Below, in pieces: positions 2,031 through 63,924 of a stretch of 64,000 bases of DNA. Position 1 is the stretch's first letter, and each line of letters opens with the position of its first letter. The translations under genes were made by a program, and so were the position numbers. The notes under the pieces are model-generated. The model was given only the letters and a program-made list of their open reading frames with translations. It was not told the DNA's origin and searched no databases. The stretch spans positions 82,156,822 through 82,220,821 of the forward strand of contig NC_068989.1 of the NCBI RefSeq assembly GCF_001194135.2, given 5' to 3'. This stretch comes from Octopus bimaculoides (Eukaryota).

Positions 2031-2182
2031 TAGGCATGAAATTTTTGGGGGTAGGGGCCAGACGATTAGATCACCCCCAGTACACAACTGATAATTTATT
2101 GACCCCAAAAGGATGAAAGACAAAGTTGACCTCGGCGGAATTTGAACTCAGAACATAAATACAAAATACTGCTAAGCATTTC

Positions 2183-2414
2183 TTATTTCTTTACTGCTCA
2201 CAAGGGGCTACACACAGAGGGGACAAACAAGGATAGACAAAGGGATTAAGTCGATTACATCGACCCCAGTGCATAACTGGTACTTAATTTATCGACCCCG
2301 AAACGATGAAAGGCAAAGTCGACCTCGGTGGAATTTGAACTCAGAACGTAATGGCAAACGAAATACCGCTAAGCATTTCGCCCGGCGCGCTAACGTTTCT
2401 GCCAGCTCGCTGCC
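2183..2414 (-). mobile_element. tRNA-derived SINE family A (GGCGGCGAGCTGGCAGAAACGTTAGC head), near full length, next to an older partial copy at about 2030-2180
   Basis: Near-identical to the copies at 4421-4655, 7468-7702, 31119-31333 and 41763-41948. Has A/B-box-like head motifs. Confidence 0.9.
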
Positions 2415-8672: not shown

Positions 8673-9529
8673 ATAAATGAGACACCTGGACTTGCAGCTC
8701 TTACTGATCATTGCTACACTCTTTCTTAAAGGTGAGTAACCATGTAGCTTCTCTATAAGAACCTGCTTGCTCTTCCCTCCTCCTTTACCCTAGACCCTCA
8801 TTTCCTCAAATAAATGCTGCCCCTCACTAGTTAGTGATCTTACTAACTCACTAGAGCTAGTGGCACAAAAAAAACAAAAAAAAAAACAAAACCAAAAATC
8901 AAAAAGCACCCAGTACACTCTGTAGAGTAGTTGGCATTAAAATAAGTATCCAACTGGAGAAACCAGGCTGCAGACACTGGAGCATGATGCAATCCTTGGA
9001 TCCATTGAATCCTGTCAAATAATCCAACCCATTCCAGGATGGAACATGGATGTTAAATAATGATGATGATGATATGTTCATGAAGATGGCGCCTTGGTGA
9101 AAATTGTGCAGCATTACATGTATGTTACTCCATTATAGGTGACATAATCAGGAGGCACTGCCACCTATCTGTCAGATAGTTCTAAATCAAAATTGGAAAA
9201 TATATCAGTCTCGTACTGCTAGAAATAGTAGCCAAATCTCCATCAAAATTTTCTATCCCGTTTTACAAAACAGGAAGGACACATTCAGTAATGTATTTCT
9301 AGATGTGCCATATCTAGTAAAATACTGTTTGACCACAGCTTGAACATCTGTTATTTTATCTAAAGTTTGATCAGAACTGATCTGTGACTACAAAAAAAGC
9401 ACAATGGCAAGAGTTACTTAAAGTGGAATTAGATGTTTAGGGGAATTACATGTTGAGAGAGAGAGGAAAGAGAGGAGAGAGAGAGAAAAAGAGATAAAGG
9501 AAAGGGAGAGAGGGGGAGAGAGAGGGAGA

Positions 9530-24742: not shown

Positions 24743-25745
24743 ACTGCATATATAGACAGACAGGTATGTAGAAATGTGTGTGTGTGAAAGTGTTTCTTTA
24801 TATAAGTAGGTGAAGATGTATATAGAACTGTGTTTGTGAAAATGCGAGTATACATATGTGTGTATGTGAAAGTGTGTATGTATACGTAGACAGAAGAGAA
24901 TGATGAGAGAGAGAGAGAGAGATCATCATCATCATCATCATCATCATCATTGTCATCAAAATATTTTCTATATTTTGCAGTTATTTTTAATTGATGTTAG
25001 CACCAGTCTGTATCCACCTCCACATATGTGTGTGTGTGTGTGTGTGTGTGTATGAGTGTGTGTATGTATGAATGTATGTGTAAATGTACATGTATCTTCA
25101 CATGTGTATGCATGTATGTGTGTGTATGTGTGTATGTCTAGATGTATATGTATGCATGTGTCGGTATACCAACAGACTTGCTTCCATACTTCCTCAGTAA
25201 CAAAAATAATCATCTCTTACATAGCAGAAGGGGAGGGGTAAGAGGGGTGATATTAGAAGTGGTGGTGGTGTGTTGGTGTCTGTGACTTTCCCCAATTACA
25301 TTACTGATATGAATTGGAAGAGAAAAAAAAAAAGAGATCACGCAACCATTCGTATGTCAGAATCTCACCTCAAAATAATGGTGCGTGGGACATCTTTCTT
25401 TAAATCGAGGAAATATATAACCCACCCTGTAAATATGTTGAATTCTCGATGAGTTGGTCACAGCTGAAATCTTGTTTTTCTTTCTTAAGATACCTGACAA
25501 CATGTCAGGTATAAAACTGGTTTACCTACCCATCATATGACACATATACATAGTCACGTGAAGCTCAAAGACAAGATAAGAGATGCCAAACCAAAATGCT
25601 CACCAAAAGTTAGTCCCCATCTGACAGACACATACACATATGTACACATAGTTTTCATGCTAGTCAGTGGAAACTGTACAAGTGGAGATAAAGATGTGCC
25701 AAACAGGTTTACCATTATTCTTGTGATTCAGAAGAAATCGCTTTT

Positions 25746-25780
25746 ACTCACCTGAAAGAGACAAAAAAAATGAGTAAATT
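25746..25780 (-). other. Candidate recursive splice site (3' splice site fused directly to a 5' splice site)
   Basis: Minus strand AATTTACTCATTTTTTTTGTCTCTTTCAG|GTGAGT: branch-like TACTCAT with A at -20, a long pyrimidine tract, CAG, then a consensus GTGAGT. Confidence 0.55.
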
Positions 25781-26644
25781 AAATCACCTTTTCAACATTG
25801 GATTAACAAAGAAACACATAACAACCAAACAGAATTGGTAAATTTCACTAAACTATAAGAGTACAGATGAATGGGTGCACCACTGTGTAGTCACTTGTAT
25901 GCTAGAAATAATAGACAAATCTTCTTCAAATTACATCTTACTGTCACAATAAAAAAAAAGGATTCATTGGATACTGTAGGCCATTGTCTAGCTTCCACCA
26001 CAAAGGGGTAGTCATGGTTGGAATGACTTTCATTATAGAGCTGACAGGACAGGATTGACCTAGTGCTCAACAACAACACAATATCTATAATAGTATCCAG
26101 TAGAGGAGCAAGGCTGACCTGGGGTTAAATAACAACAAACCTACAATAATATCAATAGAAAACCAATGTTGAGAGAGGATTAACTCTTTAGCAGGCATGT
26201 CAAACTGTAGCGTCTTTAAGGGCCACATTGCTCACAAACATGTTGTCACGGGAGCTGCATATTTTTAAACACTCGTTTACAACAAAGATTTCTGTCATAT
26301 CAATTCTTTATTATTAAGTAAAAAATATTTAAAAATCTTTTATTTGCTCATCAATAGTGCAATTTTTATTTGTGACACTAACCATCCTGTCAATGATCTT
26401 GATGTCCCCAGTTTATTATACTATCTTTCACTCAAGATACTATATGACCCAACAAACTGACCAGTATCCAATCACCAAGTGGCTGTTTGGTTAGAAGTTT
26501 GCTTCCCAATCCTGTAGTCTTGGGTTTATTCCCACTATGTGGCACCTTTGGCAATTATCTTCAACTATAGTCCCAATCCAACCAAAGGCTTATGAGTAGA
26601 TTTGGTAGAAGGAAACTGAAAGATGTGTGTATGTATGTATCTGT

Positions 26645-26990
26645 TATCATCATCATCGTTTAATGTCCGTTTTCCATGCTGGCATGGGATGGATGGTTTG
26701 ACTGGGGACTGGCAAGCCAGGAGGCCTCACTAGGCTCCAATCTGATCTGGCAATGTTTCTACAGCTAGATGCCCTTCCTAATGCCAACCACTCAGAGTGT
26801 AGTGGGTGCTTTTTACATGCCACCGGCACGGGAAGCCAGTGAGGCAGCATTGACAATGACCCACGCATGAATGGTGCTTATTGCGTGCCACCAGCACGGG
26901 AAGCCAGTGAGGCAGCATTGACAATGACCCACGCATGAATGGTGCTTATTGTGTGCCACCAGCACGAGAGCCTTTCTGTTTGTTCCTCTC
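26645..26990 (-). mobile_element. SINE family C with an internal tandem duplication
   Basis: (CAT)n tail. The block GGCACGGGAAGCCAGTGAGGCAGCATTGACAATGACCCACGCATGAATGGTGCTTATTG is duplicated. Confidence 0.85.
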
Positions 26991-33429: not shown

Positions 33430-34450
33430 TTTGTTTCGTCTACAAGATTCACCATCCAGCAATCAGCTAAATTTTCCTTTTCTGAAAATTCCTTCTGTTT
33501 AGATTCACTGATGCCATTTTTATCCAACTGTCATCTTACACATGCATCACGTAGCCATACCATCAAAGTCTTTTCTTTTGCTTACTACACCTGATTCTCT
33601 ATATCCAGTTTTTTCTTTTTACTCTCAGTTCATTTCTACTTCATCATTTATCTACACTAAAATTACACACCAACGGAGCATGTTCAACTCATTTCTTTTC
33701 TACTTCTACAGTCAATTCCCATGTTTCACAACCATTCAGCATCACTAGAATCCCTTTGGTACTAGCAGAGGTGATAGTTACCTGAACTTTTCCCATCCCA
33801 TTCTTACTCTGGCTACTCTCCTATCAGAACATTCACCTTCACAGTTAATTAGGTTACCTAGGTAGTCAAAACTATCAACTACTTCTAGGGAGTCCAGCAA
33901 GCTTTTCAAAGAATTTCCTTCACATATGCTTTCACAGCTAACTACTCCTGTACATCTGTCATACATGAAGCCTGCCTTCTCTGCTAGCTTGCTGATCTCA
34001 CTACACATCTTGTACACTCACAATTTTCATTGGGCACACCATATGGAATTCCTTCCTTCCCACTCTCTTTTTGCATATCAAACATGGACATTTTCCAAAG
34101 GGTAGCAGAGTCCTGTCACTAATTAAAATCTATATCTTCACTAGGTTTACCTGGAAACCTCTTTTTCTATATTTTGTTTCCATGTTTAGAATTTCATCTC
34201 TAAATTTTGGTTCTTAGTTGAATCTCAGCTGCTGGAATCAAAATGTGGTTATCCAAATCTTGACTCAAACAGCTAAGATTTAGTTGTTAGATCCAAGTCA
34301 TTAGCATACAGGAGTTCCCATGGTCAGCTGTTAAAATCTGGAATGAATAATAGTGAGCTGAAAACCAAGCCCTGATGAACTCCTGTTTAATTGCAATCTA
34401 AATTCCTTGCTGAATTCATTGACAATATCACTTTGTTGACAGCTCTCACA
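33430..34450 (-). mobile_element. RTE-clade LINE reverse-transcriptase remnant
   Basis: Minus-strand GVHQGLVFSSLLFI, PWELLYAND (degenerate YADD) and LEVVDSFDYLGNLINCEGECSDRRVARVRMGWEKFR, followed by a degraded LxGCETW...MLRW segment. Many stops and frameshifts. Confidence 0.85.
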
Positions 34451-37149: not shown

Positions 37150-37630
37150 TCATCATCATCGTTTAACGTCCGCTTTCCATGCTAGCATGGGTTGGACGAT
37201 TTGACTGAGGACTGGTGAAACCAGATGGCTACACCAGGCTCCAATCTGATTTGGCAGAGTTTCTACAGCTGGATGCCCTTCCTAACGCCAACCACTCTGA
37301 GAGTGTAGTGGGTGCTTTTACGTGCCACCAGCATGCGGGCCAGTTAGGCAGTTCTGGCAATGACCATGCTCAAAAGGTGTTTTTACGTGCTACCTGCATG
37401 GGAGCCAGTCCAGTGGCACTGGCAATGACCAAGCTCAAATGTTGTTTTTCACGTGCCACCGGCGCATGTGCCGGTAAGGCGACACTGGCAACGATCATGT
37501 TCGAATGGTGCTTTTCATGAGTAACTGGCACGGGAGACAATTTGTGGCCTTGGCAACGGTCATGCTCGGATGCGCTTTTAATATTCCACTGGCATGAATG
37601 CCAATCAGGCAGTATTGTCATTGGCCATGT
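37150..37630 (-). mobile_element. SINE family C with about 5 internal units of roughly 58 bp
   Basis: (CAT)n tail and repeated GTGCCACC..GGCACTGGCAA..GCTC..TGGTGCTTTT units. Confidence 0.88.
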
Positions 37631-39233: not shown

Positions 39234-40105
39234 TATGTTAAGAATATGTCAAAAGCATATTCTTAACACAGTGACACCCAGTATTTGGCGCAACTGTGAG
39301 GGTTCTAACTGAGAGTTACTCACATTTATATGCGAAGGACCTGTTGAGAGTCACTTATGTTTAGGATTTGTGTCTATGTGGTAGGAACCAAATGATGTGA
39401 CATGATGTATTTCCCAGTGAGATTAGTAAAGCTAGTTCAACGAAGCAATGATAAAGAATAAATAGTACCAAGTAATGTTTACCTTCACCAATTCTATCTT
39501 ATACCTGACATAGACAAAAGAGAATTTTATACGAAGATTATTTTCTTTAATACATTTTCATCAATTTTATTCTAGTTGTTTTACATTTATGTGGGTTTGA
39601 TGGGTCTGACTCTCATAAAAACAACCAAGATAGTAATTTGATTTAGAAGCTGCAATGAAAATGTCTGTATAGTATTTTGAAAGATATCACTGGGGTTACC
39701 TGTATGTATTCAGGTAATAAAACAGAGGGAGCTAACAGAAGGTAGTGGAGGCAGGGGGCAAGAAAAACAAAACCCCCATCAACACATTCATACAAGAACA
39801 TACAGGTAATGTATCACTTCATTGAAAAGTGTTGGGGAAGGGGCGAATGCCATCAACCAGATTCCAACATACCAAACCTATTTGCAAAGGATGAAGTTGA
39901 TTGTTTTCAGCTCTGGTGTCTAGCAACTCGTGAAACACAATACATTGCAGCTCAAACTTTACATGTGACTACAACTTACTCCACACGTACACACATTTGT
40001 TGGGAACATTGTTTTAGTTTAACCCTAGGTAAACTTTGAATAAGTAAACTTATAATCAAAGGTATTTAGCTGTAACCATTTCATTTTTCCTATTTCTGGT
40101 AATAT

Positions 40106-40533
40106 ATCCAATGTGGCTACAATGGATGTAGTGCTAGTACAAAGACCATGCTATCCAATGTGTCTACAATGGATGTAGTGTTAGTACAAAGACCATGCTA
40201 TCCAATGTGGCTACAATGGATGTAGTGCTAGTACAAAGACCATGCTATCCAATGTGGCTACAATGGATGTAGTGTTAGTACAAAGACCATGCTATCCAAT
40301 GTGTCTACAATGGATGTAGTGCNNNNNNNNNNATATCCAATGTGGCTACAATGGATGTAGTGCTAGTACAAAGACCATGCTATCCAATGTGGCTACAATG
40401 GATGTAGTGTTAGTACAAAGACCATGCTATCCAATGTGTCTACAATGGATGTAGTGCTAGTACAAAGACCATGCTATCCAATGTGGCTACAATGGATGTA
40501 GTGCTAGTACAAAGACCCTGCTATCCAATGTGT
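40106..40533. repeat. Homogeneous 47-bp minisatellite (ATCCAATGTGGCTACAATGGATGTAGTGCTAGTACAAAGACCATGCT), at least 8 units, collapsed at a 10-N gap
   Basis: Period of 47 measured between 40106 and 40153. Only a few recurring variant positions. Confidence 0.95.
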
Positions 40534-41439
40534 CTCTTCTTATCTGAAGATGACAGCTTGTGACTGAAAGAAATTTAGTTGCTATGTCTAGCAGACCACT
40601 AGTTTATCAGTAACACTGATAGTAATATCACAGGTATTTCCCCAAACTAAACACCAATAAATAGGGAGCAGAAATGACAAATATTTTCTTGGTAATTATT
40701 GTTTCTTGCTATTTCAAACTCTGTAGTACAATCAAAATTACACGACAGGTGGCAAATTACCAGCATACATACCATTGACATCAGCCCAGCTAGCTTTCAA
40801 CAACATTAGCTTTACATAGCAGACATTTGTAACACTTATACCAATATAGTAATAAGGCCTTGGATGTCTTAAGGCAGCAGCAACTCTATAGAATGGAAAC
40901 CTAGATTCTCTTGGTGGAGGACATTTCAAGTACAGATCATTACAAGATAGCAGACAAGGTGAATGATTCAGTTGTGAAATAGGACTGAACCCAGGATTAA
41001 TTCTCAAAGCCAATAAGTATTTGTAACGTAGGCACAAGGATACAAACTAGCGTGAGGATTATATAAACAAGTAGTTCCACCCAGTGCTCAGCTAATATTT
41101 ATCTTATTAACCCTGGATATATGAACGACAATGTCATCTTCAGAGTGATTTGAACACTGAACGTAAAGATCCACAAATAAATAATCCAAAACATTTTGTT
41201 AATCACTCTAACGATTCTGTCAAAATTTTTAACACTAGCACACATTTTGAGGGGAGAGAAATACTGACTTCAGTGTGTAACTGGTAGCTTAACTACCACT
41301 CCTGTTATTACTACTATTGCAAGGCATTAATAATAATAATAATAATAATTATAATAATAATAATAATGATTTCAAATTTTGCCACAAGGGCAGCCATTTT
41401 GGGGGAGTTGATTACATTGAATAAATAATAATAATAATA

Positions 41440-63289: not shown

Positions 63290-63924
63290 CAGTAGTACCT
63301 CGGTTTATGAACACCTCTGATCACGAATAAATCGTGCTTTATGTACCTGTGCCAGTGGAGTACTAACAGCACTGTCTAAGCGTGATCATTGCTAGAGCAG
63401 CTGTCTGGCTTCCGTGCCAGTGGCACGTAAATAGCACCATTTGAGCATGATCATTACCAGCATCACCTTACTGGCACCTGTGCCAGTGGCATGTTAGAAA
63501 ACATTCAAGCGAGGTCATTGCCAGTGCCGCTGGACTGGCTCCTGTGCAGGTGGCACGTAAAAAAACACCATTTTCAGCATGGCCGTTGCCAGTACTGCCT
63601 GACTGGCCCTCGTGTCAGTGGCACATAAAAGCACCAACTACAATCTTGGAGTGGTTGGTGTTAGGAAGGGCATCCAGCTGTAGAAACTCTGCCAGATCAG
63701 ACTGGAGTCTGGTGTAGCCATCCAGTTCGCCAGTCCTCAGTCAAATCGNNNNNNNNNNTCTGCCAGATCAGACTGGAGTCTGGTGTAGCCATCCAGTTCG
63801 CCAGTCCTCAGTCAAATCGTCCAACCCATGCTAGCATGGAAAGCAGACGTTAAATGATGATGATGATATGTATAAAGCATGATTTATTCATGATCTGAGG
63901 TGTTCAAAAACCGAGGTACTACTG
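63290..63924. mobile_element. Tigger-like hairpin MITE split at its centre by a SINE family C insertion (about 63340-63868)
   Basis: TIR CAGTAGTACCTCGGTTT..GAACAC at both ends. Inner arms GATCACGAATAAATCGTGCTTTA / TAAAGCATGATTTATTCATGATC. Confidence 0.85.

What the first reader, a model, noticed from the sequence alone, without database searches (positions are those of the whole stretch)
25713..25780. Candidate recursive splice site (zero-length exon) in a giant cephalopod intron
The minus strand reads TACTCA-TTTTTTTTGTCTCTTTCAG|GTGAGT: a branch-like motif, a 16-nt mostly pyrimidine tract, CAG, and at once a consensus donor. It is on the same strand as, and 34,830 nt downstream of, the exon-1 donor at 60581. 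A second donor (ATG|GTAAAC, 25713/25712) lies 39 nt later and would define a short cryptic exon, as described for recursive sites in Drosophila and mammals (established). It was the only AG|GT of this quality I found by eye on the minus strand. I am not aware of recursive splicing being characterised in molluscs.
Basis: partly seen in the sequence, partly recalled or inferred. Interest (0 to 1): 0.7.

Follow-up and report, generated by a model that had tools for sequence, protein, structure and literature searches.

The report
Unverified candidate recursive splice site
The minus strand carries a near-perfect splice acceptor joined directly to a consensus splice donor, the kind of motif used to remove very long introns in steps. 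No RNA data, gene annotation or related genome could be reached to show that it is used.

Summary
The minus strand reads TACTCA-T8GTCTCTTTCAG|GTGAGT (AG|GT = 25752|25751). A second donor, ATG|GTAAAC, lies 39 nt downstream, and CAG|GTAAAC lies at 60582|60581.

The AG|GT is a real outlier. Its composite acceptor-plus-donor score is 14.5 bits, against 8.1 for the runner-up among 428 AGGT on both strands. It is z≈3.9 against the other AGGT and against reversed-sequence decoys. About 0.003-0.02 such sites are expected per 64-kb window.

It sits in about 1.3 kb with no other copy in the window. It has the sequence hallmarks of fly ratchet points:
- TT at -5/-6.
- An acceptor-side stretch free of other AGs.
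- A regenerated donor much stronger than the downstream donors.
- Stop codons in all frames of the short cryptic exon.

The supporting arguments are weak. The second donor is chance-level. "Exon 1" rests only on a TATA/CCAAT/E-box cluster in a patch that has kept its CpGs. No coding exon, gene, organism, transcript or orthologue could be recovered.

About 130-840 sites of this quality are expected by chance in a genome of about 2.7 Gb. My estimates are about 0.4 for a used recursive site, 0.38 for a chance motif and 0.15 for the acceptor of an ordinary exon. It remains a testable candidate, not a demonstrated feature.

The parts
25771..25776 (-). Branch-point-like TACTCA. The candidate branch A is 25771, at -20. 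Alternatives are TTTAC (A25775, -24) and TTAAT (about -28/-29).
   Evidence: Read directly. It matches only the loose yUnAy rule, so it is weak evidence. All three candidates lie inside the AG-free stretch 25787-25754.
25754..25770 (-). Polypyrimidine tract T8-G-TCTCTTTC, 16 of 17 pyrimidines, with TT at -5/-6.
   Evidence: The upstream acceptor part scores 8.08 bits, and only 14 of 7342 AGs in the window score as high. TT at -5/-6 occurs in 196/197 fly ratchet points (10.1101/006163).
25746..25753 (-). Core AG|GTGAGT: the acceptor AG (25753-25752) abuts a consensus donor (25751-25746).
   Evidence: Joined to any exon ending in CAG, the regenerated donor CAG|GTGAGT scores 9.08 bits, and only 2 of all GTs in the window reach that.
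25713..25751 (-). 39-nt putative cryptic recursive exon. It has stop codons in all three frames and ends in ATG.
   Evidence: Read directly: GTG AGT AAA AGC GAT TTC TTC TGA; G TGA; GT GAG TAA.
25707..25712 (-). Weak downstream donor ATG|GTAAAC.
   Evidence: 0.72 bits, 93rd percentile of GTs in the window. Such donors occur about every 233 nt per strand.
25598..25603 (-). Stronger alternative downstream donor TTG|GTGAGC. It would define a 148-nt cryptic exon (25751-25604).
   Evidence: 3.87 bits.
60576..60584 (-). Putative exon-1 donor CAG|GTAAAC (60582|60581).
   Evidence: 3.66 bits. 113 GTs in the window score as well, so it is not significant alone. No ATG-initiated frame stays open to it, so exon 1 would be 5'UTR.
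60850..60988 (-). Promoter-like cluster: inverted CCAAT box (ATTGG, 60988-60984), CACGTG (60904-60899) and TATAAATA (60857-60850). The inferred start of transcription is near 60827.
   Evidence: It lies in the most G+C-rich part of the window, which has also kept its CpGs (60501-61000: GC 0.47-0.48, CpG o/e 0.85-1.02, against 0.33 for the whole window). TATAAA alone occurs 112 times in the window.

Best explanation
The site is a recursive splice site (a ratchet point with a cryptic recursive exon) inside a long, probably first, intron of a minus-strand transcript that starts near 60.8 kb.

Proposed mechanism, all steps inferred:
1. The spliceosome recognises the strong tract and CAG at 25752. 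It is probably helped by exon definition across a short cryptic exon, ending at the donor at 25712 or at the better one at 25603.
2. Exon 1 (...CAG, 60582) is joined to G25751, removing about 35 kb as a first lariat.
3. The junction regenerates a perfect donor, CAG|GTGAGT. This outcompetes the much weaker cryptic-exon donors.
4. The remainder of the intron, more than 25.7 kb and running off the window, is removed from that regenerated donor.
5. Nothing from this site is left in the mRNA.

Shown here: the motif, its rarity, its position in unique sequence, and the relative donor strengths. Inferred: transcription of this strand, the identity of exon 1, and use of the site.
For: - The motif is the top composite AG|GT of 428 in the window, by 6.4 bits.
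- It is z = 3.9 against the other AGGT and against reversed-sequence decoys, with 0.003-0.02 expected per window.
- TT at -5/-6 and a prominent pyrimidine tract match 196/197 fly ratchet points.
- No AG lies between 25788 and the acceptor.
- The regenerated donor scores 9.08 bits, against 0.72 and 3.87 for the downstream donors. In flies this ordering leads to skipping of the cryptic exon (PMC8605326).
- The site lies in about 1.3 kb with no other copy in the window.
- It has the same orientation as a TATA/CCAAT/E-box cluster in a patch that has kept its CpGs, 35 kb upstream.
- No minus-strand coding exon is detectable anywhere in the window, which fits a very long intron.
- A 35-kb first segment is within the fly range of 2.6-63.6 kb.
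- In flies, most introns over 40 kb carry such sites (PMC6110457).
Against: - There is no RNA evidence, no conservation evidence and no gene annotation.
A repeat family carrying the motif would add more.
- In vertebrates most motif-matching candidates fail: 419 matched the motif and 9 reached high confidence (PMC13149111).
- In lungfish, very long introns did not bring widespread recursive splicing.
- Neither the exon-1 donor nor the second donor is individually significant.
- Part of the CpG-retaining zone (59406-59835) is a foldback repeat, not a promoter.
- The strand-composition skew is inconclusive.
- The candidate branch A at -20 lies just outside the -36 to -21 range seen for fly ratchet points.
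Confidence: 0.4

Rival explanations
1. It is a chance juxtaposition. A T-rich run followed by CAGGTGAGT arose by drift, or came in with an old low-copy repeat or an antisense retroposon tail. It is not used by the spliceosome, or is used only at noise level.
For: - A large genome should hold hundreds of such sites by chance.
- The crude product of tract and core frequencies gives 0.08 per window.
- A near-miss, CTCTTTCTTAAAG|GTGAGT, sits on the opposite strand at 8731.
- The supporting features (second donor, branch motif, exon-1 donor) are all at chance level.
- No gene or exon could be found in the window.
- In vertebrates, most motif candidates are not confirmed.
- On the plus strand the tract is an A8 run, which an old retroposon tail could have left. 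This was not tested.
Against: - The per-window probability is only about 0.003-0.02.
- The site exceeds every decoy by more than 7 bits.
- There is no second copy of the surrounding 1.3 kb in the window.
- The orientation agrees with the only promoter-like region in the window.
Confidence: 0.38
2. It is the acceptor of an ordinary exon that reaches mature RNA and merely happens to begin with GTGAGT. The exon could be a 5'UTR exon, an alternative or poison exon, or an exon of a non-coding RNA. One option is the 39-nt exon ending in ATG, or the 148-nt version. Fly 'expressed recursive exons' are the closest parallel.
For: - The acceptor is very strong.
- Two downstream donors lie at exon-like distances.
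- Putative exon 1 is non-coding. A following UTR exon is therefore plausible, and stops in all frames would not matter.
- The 39-nt interval ends exactly in ATG with A at -3.
- Flies have fewer than 50 expressed recursive exons, against more than 500 intronic ratchet points.
Against: - The regenerated donor (9.08 bits) is far stronger than either exon donor (0.72 and 3.87). By the donor-competition rule, the exon should be skipped.
- Stops in all three frames exclude a coding cassette.
- No protein in the database matches any open frame around the site.
Confidence: 0.15

Closest known systems
Drosophila intronic ratchet points (zero-nucleotide recursive sites; Ubx, kuz, Bx, luna; Hatton 1998, Burnette 2005, Duff 2015, Joseph 2018/2021, Pai 2018)
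   Same: - A long pyrimidine tract with TT at -5/-6, then CAG|GTRAGT.
- A short cryptic exon with a weaker downstream donor, unable to code.
- A tens-of-kb segment upstream, and a position well inside a very long intron if the exon-1 inference holds.
   Different: - A different phylum, and a genome about 20 times larger, so many more chance matches are expected.
- No junction, saw-tooth, lariat or conservation evidence.
- The candidate branch A at -20 is closer than the fly range of -36 to -21.
- The cryptic exon is 39 nt (or 148 nt), against about 50 nt in flies.
Vertebrate recursive sites with recursive exons (Sibley 2015; later human total- and nascent-RNA studies)
   Same: - An AG|GT motif in a long, possibly first, intron.
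- An exon-definition model with competition between the regenerated donor and the exon donor.
- A CG-rich context at the upstream donor. This has been reported as a feature of human recursively spliced first introns (10.64898/2026.04.13.717821). Here the putative exon-1 donor sits in sequence that has kept its CpGs.
   Different: - Vertebrate high-confidence sites are few and are defined by RNA evidence and deep conservation. Neither is available here.
- The CG-rich resemblance is a lead only. The classifier from that study was not run.
Cryptic pseudoexons and background splice-site-like motifs in long introns (for example DMD pseudoexons and repeat-derived exonisation)
   Same: A strong acceptor-like tract plus nearby donors in deep intronic sequence that normally contributes nothing to mRNA.
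   Different: Pseudoexon acceptors are not normally followed at position +1 by a consensus GTGAGT. No repeat origin could be shown for this 1.3-kb stretch.

Membership tests
Recursive splice site / ratchet point | A 3' splice-site motif (pyrimidine tract, YAG) directly abutting a 5' splice-site motif (GTRAGT) | tested here: met
   T8GTCTCTTTCAG|GTGAGT. Composite score 14.5 bits, top of 428 AGGT.
Recursive splice site / ratchet point | TT at -5/-6 and a more prominent pyrimidine tract than ordinary acceptors (fly sites, 196/197) | tested here: met
   -6 and -5 are TT, and 16 of 17 tract positions are pyrimidines. The criterion is from 10.1101/006163.
Recursive splice site / ratchet point | Lies on the sense strand inside a long (more than 10 kb) intron of a transcribed gene | tested here: inconclusive
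   - A promoter-like cluster and a donor lie 35 kb upstream on the same strand.
- No minus-strand coding exon was found in the window.
- No annotation or transcript could be obtained, and the strand skew is not significant.
Recursive splice site / ratchet point | Exon-to-site junction reads, a saw-tooth in intronic read density, and lariats to and from the site | not testable with these tools
   No RNA-seq data are accessible. The collections searched hold no DNA of this organism.
Recursive splice site / ratchet point | Evolutionary conservation of the AG|GT core above that of the flanking intron | not testable with these tools
   No orthologous sequence was retrievable. This covers an exact ORF look-up, three protein searches and DNA scans.
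Recursive splice site / ratchet point | A cryptic exon with a downstream donor weaker than the regenerated donor, so that the exon is skipped | tested here: met
   9.08 bits against 0.72 bits (39 nt) and 3.87 bits (148 nt). The mere presence of such donors is expected by chance.
Ordinary coding cassette exon | An open reading frame through the exon, and homology to a protein | tested here: not met
   There are stops in all three frames of the 39-nt interval. No homologues were found for any open frame in 25170-26470.
Interspersed repeat carrying a splice-like motif | Further copies of the surrounding sequence | tested here: inconclusive
   There is no other copy of 25170-26470 in the 64-kb window, whereas the SINE families have about 10 copies each. 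Genome-wide copy number could not be tested.

The most novel reading that the evidence does not exclude
This is a working, fly-type ratchet point in a mollusc. It would be the first recursive splice site in a lophotrochozoan. It would imply that stepwise removal of very long introns at AG|GTRAGT sites goes back to the bilaterian ancestor, or arose again as cephalopod introns expanded.
Probability: 0.35. Interest if true: 0.6.

Novelty: new member of a known kind. Interest (0 to 1): 0.35.

Why it matters
Recursive splicing has been characterised in Drosophila and vertebrates. I found no paper that describes it in molluscs.

Octopus genomes are vertebrate-sized and have many long introns. A confirmed site with the fly-type motif would extend the mechanism to a third major animal lineage. 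It would bear on whether the mechanism is ancestral or tied to intron expansion. It would also give a sequence template for a genome-wide scan.

As it stands, this is one well-scoring motif. Its value is as a cheap, precise hypothesis for anyone with total RNA-seq from this species.

Tried and rejected
**Orthologues and transcripts through proteins**
- An exact look-up of the ORF overlapping the site (25537-25755+) found nothing on record.
- Three searches with chimeric queries found no hit at E<=0.001. They covered all open frames in 25170-26470, 19 of the more protein-like frames including repeat-derived frames and the promoter region, and 87 non-repeat minus-strand frames of at least 40 aa.

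**DNA scans**
- A 24-mer spanning the junction found nothing in metagenome contigs or genome contigs.
- The abundant SINE core found nothing in metagenome contigs, so that collection holds no DNA of this organism.

**Other RNA genes**
- There were no Rfam hits and no tRNAs.

**Naive exon finder**
- I paired acceptors of at least 4.5 bits with donors of at least 3 bits and required an open frame. This gave 7 weak candidates, none convincing.

**Strand of transcription from composition**
- The plus-strand A-over-T skew is +0.020 ± 0.011 with no GC skew, which is inconclusive.
- SINE orientation is 6 minus to 4 plus, which is uninformative.

**Taxon check**
- A literature search for the SINE sequence string found nothing. 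The octopus attribution rests on recognition, and on the SINE-dominated repeat content being consistent with PMC9068888.

**Readings rejected**
- Coding microexon: stops in all frames.
- Repeat copy within the window: none found.
- The whole zone 59250-61250 as a promoter island: 59406-59835 is a foldback repeat.

Full report
**1. The observation**

On the minus strand the window reads ...GGTGATTTAATTTACTCATTTTTTTTGTCTCTTTCAG|GTGAGTAAAAGCGATTTCTTCTGAATCACAAGAATAATG|GTAAACC....
- TACTCA is 25776-25771.
- The AG|GT junction is 25752|25751.
- The second donor is 25713|25712, 39 nt downstream.
- CAG|GTAAAC is at 60582|60581.
- The stated distance of 34,830 nt is arithmetically correct. It spans six assembly gaps totalling 896 N, so it is approximate.

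The window is 36% G+C, has 12 N-gaps, and is full of microsatellites and SINE copies. This is a draft assembly of a large animal genome.

**2. Is it more than chance?**

There are 8 AGGTRAGT in the window, four on each strand. Only this one combines YAG with at least 14 of 16 pyrimidines upstream.

I scored sites with position weight matrices for acceptor and donor. The frequencies are approximate, human-like values typed from my own knowledge, so the scores are a ranking device and not MaxEnt scores.
- The site scores 14.5 bits. The runner-up, AAG|GTGAGT at 8731 on the plus strand, scores 8.1.
- On a second scale that leaves out the +1 acceptor position, the site scores 13.1 bits. On that scale the best of 552 AGGT in reversed-sequence decoys, which keep local composition and run structure, scores 5.9.
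- The site is 3.9 SD above the other AGGT and above the decoys.

Expected numbers of equally good sites per 64-kb window, both strands:
- 0.007-0.013 from Markov order 1/3/5 simulations of the pattern definition.
- 0.003 from the product of the empirical marginal frequencies. 14 of 7342 AGs have as good an upstream part, and 34 of 7833 GTs have as good an intronic part.
- 0.02 from a normal-tail fit.
- 0.08 from a crude product of tract frequency and core frequency.

So the motif is genuinely unusual for one window. Scaled to a genome of about 2.7 Gb (genome size from my own knowledge), the PWM-based rates still predict roughly 130-840 chance sites.

**3. The supporting details**

- The second donor ATG|GTAAAC scores 0.72 bits. 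550 GTs in the window do as well, about one per 233 nt of strand. Finding one within 39 nt has a probability of about 15%.
- A better donor, TTG|GTGAGC at 3.87 bits, lies 148 nt downstream at 25603.
- The branch-like TACTCA fits only the loose yUnAy rule. TTTAC (-24) and TTAAT (about -29) are equally acceptable.
- All three branch candidates lie in a stretch, 25787-25754, that has no other AG before the acceptor.
- The 39-nt interval has stop codons in all three frames and ends in ATG.
- If the acceptor were joined to an exon ending in CAG, the regenerated donor CAG|GTGAGT would score 9.08 bits. Only two GTs in the window reach that.

**4. Surroundings of the site**

- A BLAST of 24.7-26.8 kb against the whole window shows that 25170-26470 has no other copy in the window apart from two short weak matches (31-36 nt) at 25900-25935.
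- That stretch is flanked by microsatellite sequence (24.7-25.17 kb) and by repeat copies (26476-26969).
- In a whole-window self-comparison, 24% of the window is within-window repeat.
- No open frame around the site has any homologue among 5.8 billion proteins.

**5. Is there a gene on the minus strand?**

- CpG is strongly depleted over the window (observed/expected 0.33). It is close to 1 from about 59.25 to 61.25 kb and falls to about zero at 61.75-62.5 kb.
- Inside that zone the minus strand has an inverted CCAAT box (60988), CACGTG (60904) and TATAAATA (60857-60850). The donor at 60581 lies about 245 nt downstream of the implied start.
- This is the only promoter-like place in the window, and it points towards the site.

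Each element is weak on its own.
- TATAAA occurs 112 times in the window.
- 113 GTs match the exon-1 donor score.
- No ATG-initiated frame reaches the donor, so exon 1 would be untranslated.
- 59406-59835 of the CpG-retaining zone is a foldback element with nested inverted repeats and a -61.9 kcal/mol hairpin. It is not a promoter.

No coding exon is evident on either strand. 87 non-repeat minus-strand open frames gave no protein hit, and neither did 19 of the more protein-like frames from both strands. That fits a very long intron, but it fits intergenic DNA equally well. Strand-composition skew is inconclusive. There are no Rfam or tRNA genes.

**6. Comparison with known recursive sites**

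[quoted passage not shown] 196 of 197 have TT at -5/-6.
- They lie in introns of 11-133 kb, with removed segments of 2.6-63.6 kb.
- Their branch points lie mostly at -36 to -21, and they are strongly conserved (10.1101/006163).
- They include a cryptic exon of about 50 nt whose donor loses to the regenerated donor. [quoted passage not shown]
- Most fly introns over 40 kb have such sites, often near the midpoint (PMC6110457).

The present site meets every one of the sequence-level criteria.

The experience in vertebrates is sobering. 419 junction-supported motif matches gave 9 high-confidence sites (PMC13149111). Lungfish, with enormous introns, show no more use of conserved recursive sites than humans do (10.1101/2024.12.11.627982).

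No paper in the searchable library deals with recursive splicing in octopus, cephalopods or molluscs.

**7. What could not be done**

The defining functional evidence is junction reads, the saw-tooth pattern, lariats and conservation. All of it needs RNA-seq or other cephalopod genomes, and none was reachable. This was tried by exact ORF look-up, protein searches and DNA scans. The taxon itself could not be verified by a tool. The SINE-dominated repeat content is consistent with what is reported for octopus (PMC9068888).

**8. Weighing the explanations**

- Suppose true strong recursive sites in this genome number a few hundred. Then the rate of true sites per window is about the same as the chance rate (about 0.01), giving roughly even odds.
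- The agreement in orientation with the only promoter-like region raises the odds somewhat.
- The possibility of repeat-borne copies of the motif, and the poor vertebrate track record, lower them.
- If the acceptor is used at all, donor competition makes re-splicing from the regenerated GTGAGT the expected outcome.

My estimates are:
- About 0.40 for a recursive site used in vivo.
- About 0.38 for a chance motif, unused or used only at noise level.
- About 0.15 for the acceptor of an exon that reaches mature RNA.

If real, it is a new member of a known kind, in a phylum where the mechanism has not been described. For now it is a precise, cheaply testable candidate.

Noticed in passing
window 59406-59835: A foldback or MITE-like element of about 430 bp with terminal inverted repeats (59406-59442 / 59799-59835) and nested inverted repeats. 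The central 101 nt fold into a near-perfect hairpin (-61.9 kcal/mol, z = -11.2). It is CpG-rich, so probably young, and it accounts for part of the apparent CpG island.
   Followed up: partly
window 59250-61250 versus 61500-62500: There is a sharp boundary in CpG content. Observed/expected is about 0.85-1.6 over 2 kb, then no CpG at all in 61751-62500. The whole window is at 0.33. This suggests an unmethylated island in otherwise germline-methylated DNA.
   Followed up: partly
window 2121-2347, 4551, 7540, 17783, 31233, 31819, 32034, 41562, 41784: Ten copies of a SINE, which from its sequence I take to be tRNA-derived. The core is GTTCTGAGTTCAAATTCCGCCGAGGTCGACTTTG, with six copies on the minus strand and four on the plus strand. 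The copies at 2100-2430 still have most of their CpGs and so look young.
   Followed up: partly
window 26805-26966, 37311-37460, 63378-63623 (also about 29.1, 43.3 and 55.3 kb): A second repeat family with an internal tandem unit of 65-68 bp (GGTGCTTATTGCGTGCCACCAGCA...). It gives a recurring spurious open frame, '...DGYTRLQSDLAEFLQLDALPNANHSESVVGAF...'.
   Followed up: no
window 40104-40535: A 47-bp minisatellite of about 9 copies at 88% identity, interrupted by a 10-N assembly gap.
   Followed up: no
window 8731 (+): The runner-up AG|GT is on the opposite strand: CTCTTTCTTAAAG|GTGAGTAAC (13/16 pyrimidines, but an AAG acceptor; 8.1 bits). It lies within the range expected by chance.
   Followed up: yes
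window 33781-34017 (-): An open frame ending ...VVDSFDYLGNLINCEGECSDRRVARVRMGWEKFR resembles the C-terminal region of LINE reverse transcriptases. This rests on my recognition only. It was not significant in the protein search.
   Followed up: partly
window 25305-25340 (-): A second very strong acceptor-like tract lies 450 nt downstream of the site: CTCTTTTTTTTTTTCTCTTCCAATTCATATCAG|T. It is followed 83 nt later by T|GTAAGA. The open frame through it had no homologues.
   Followed up: partly
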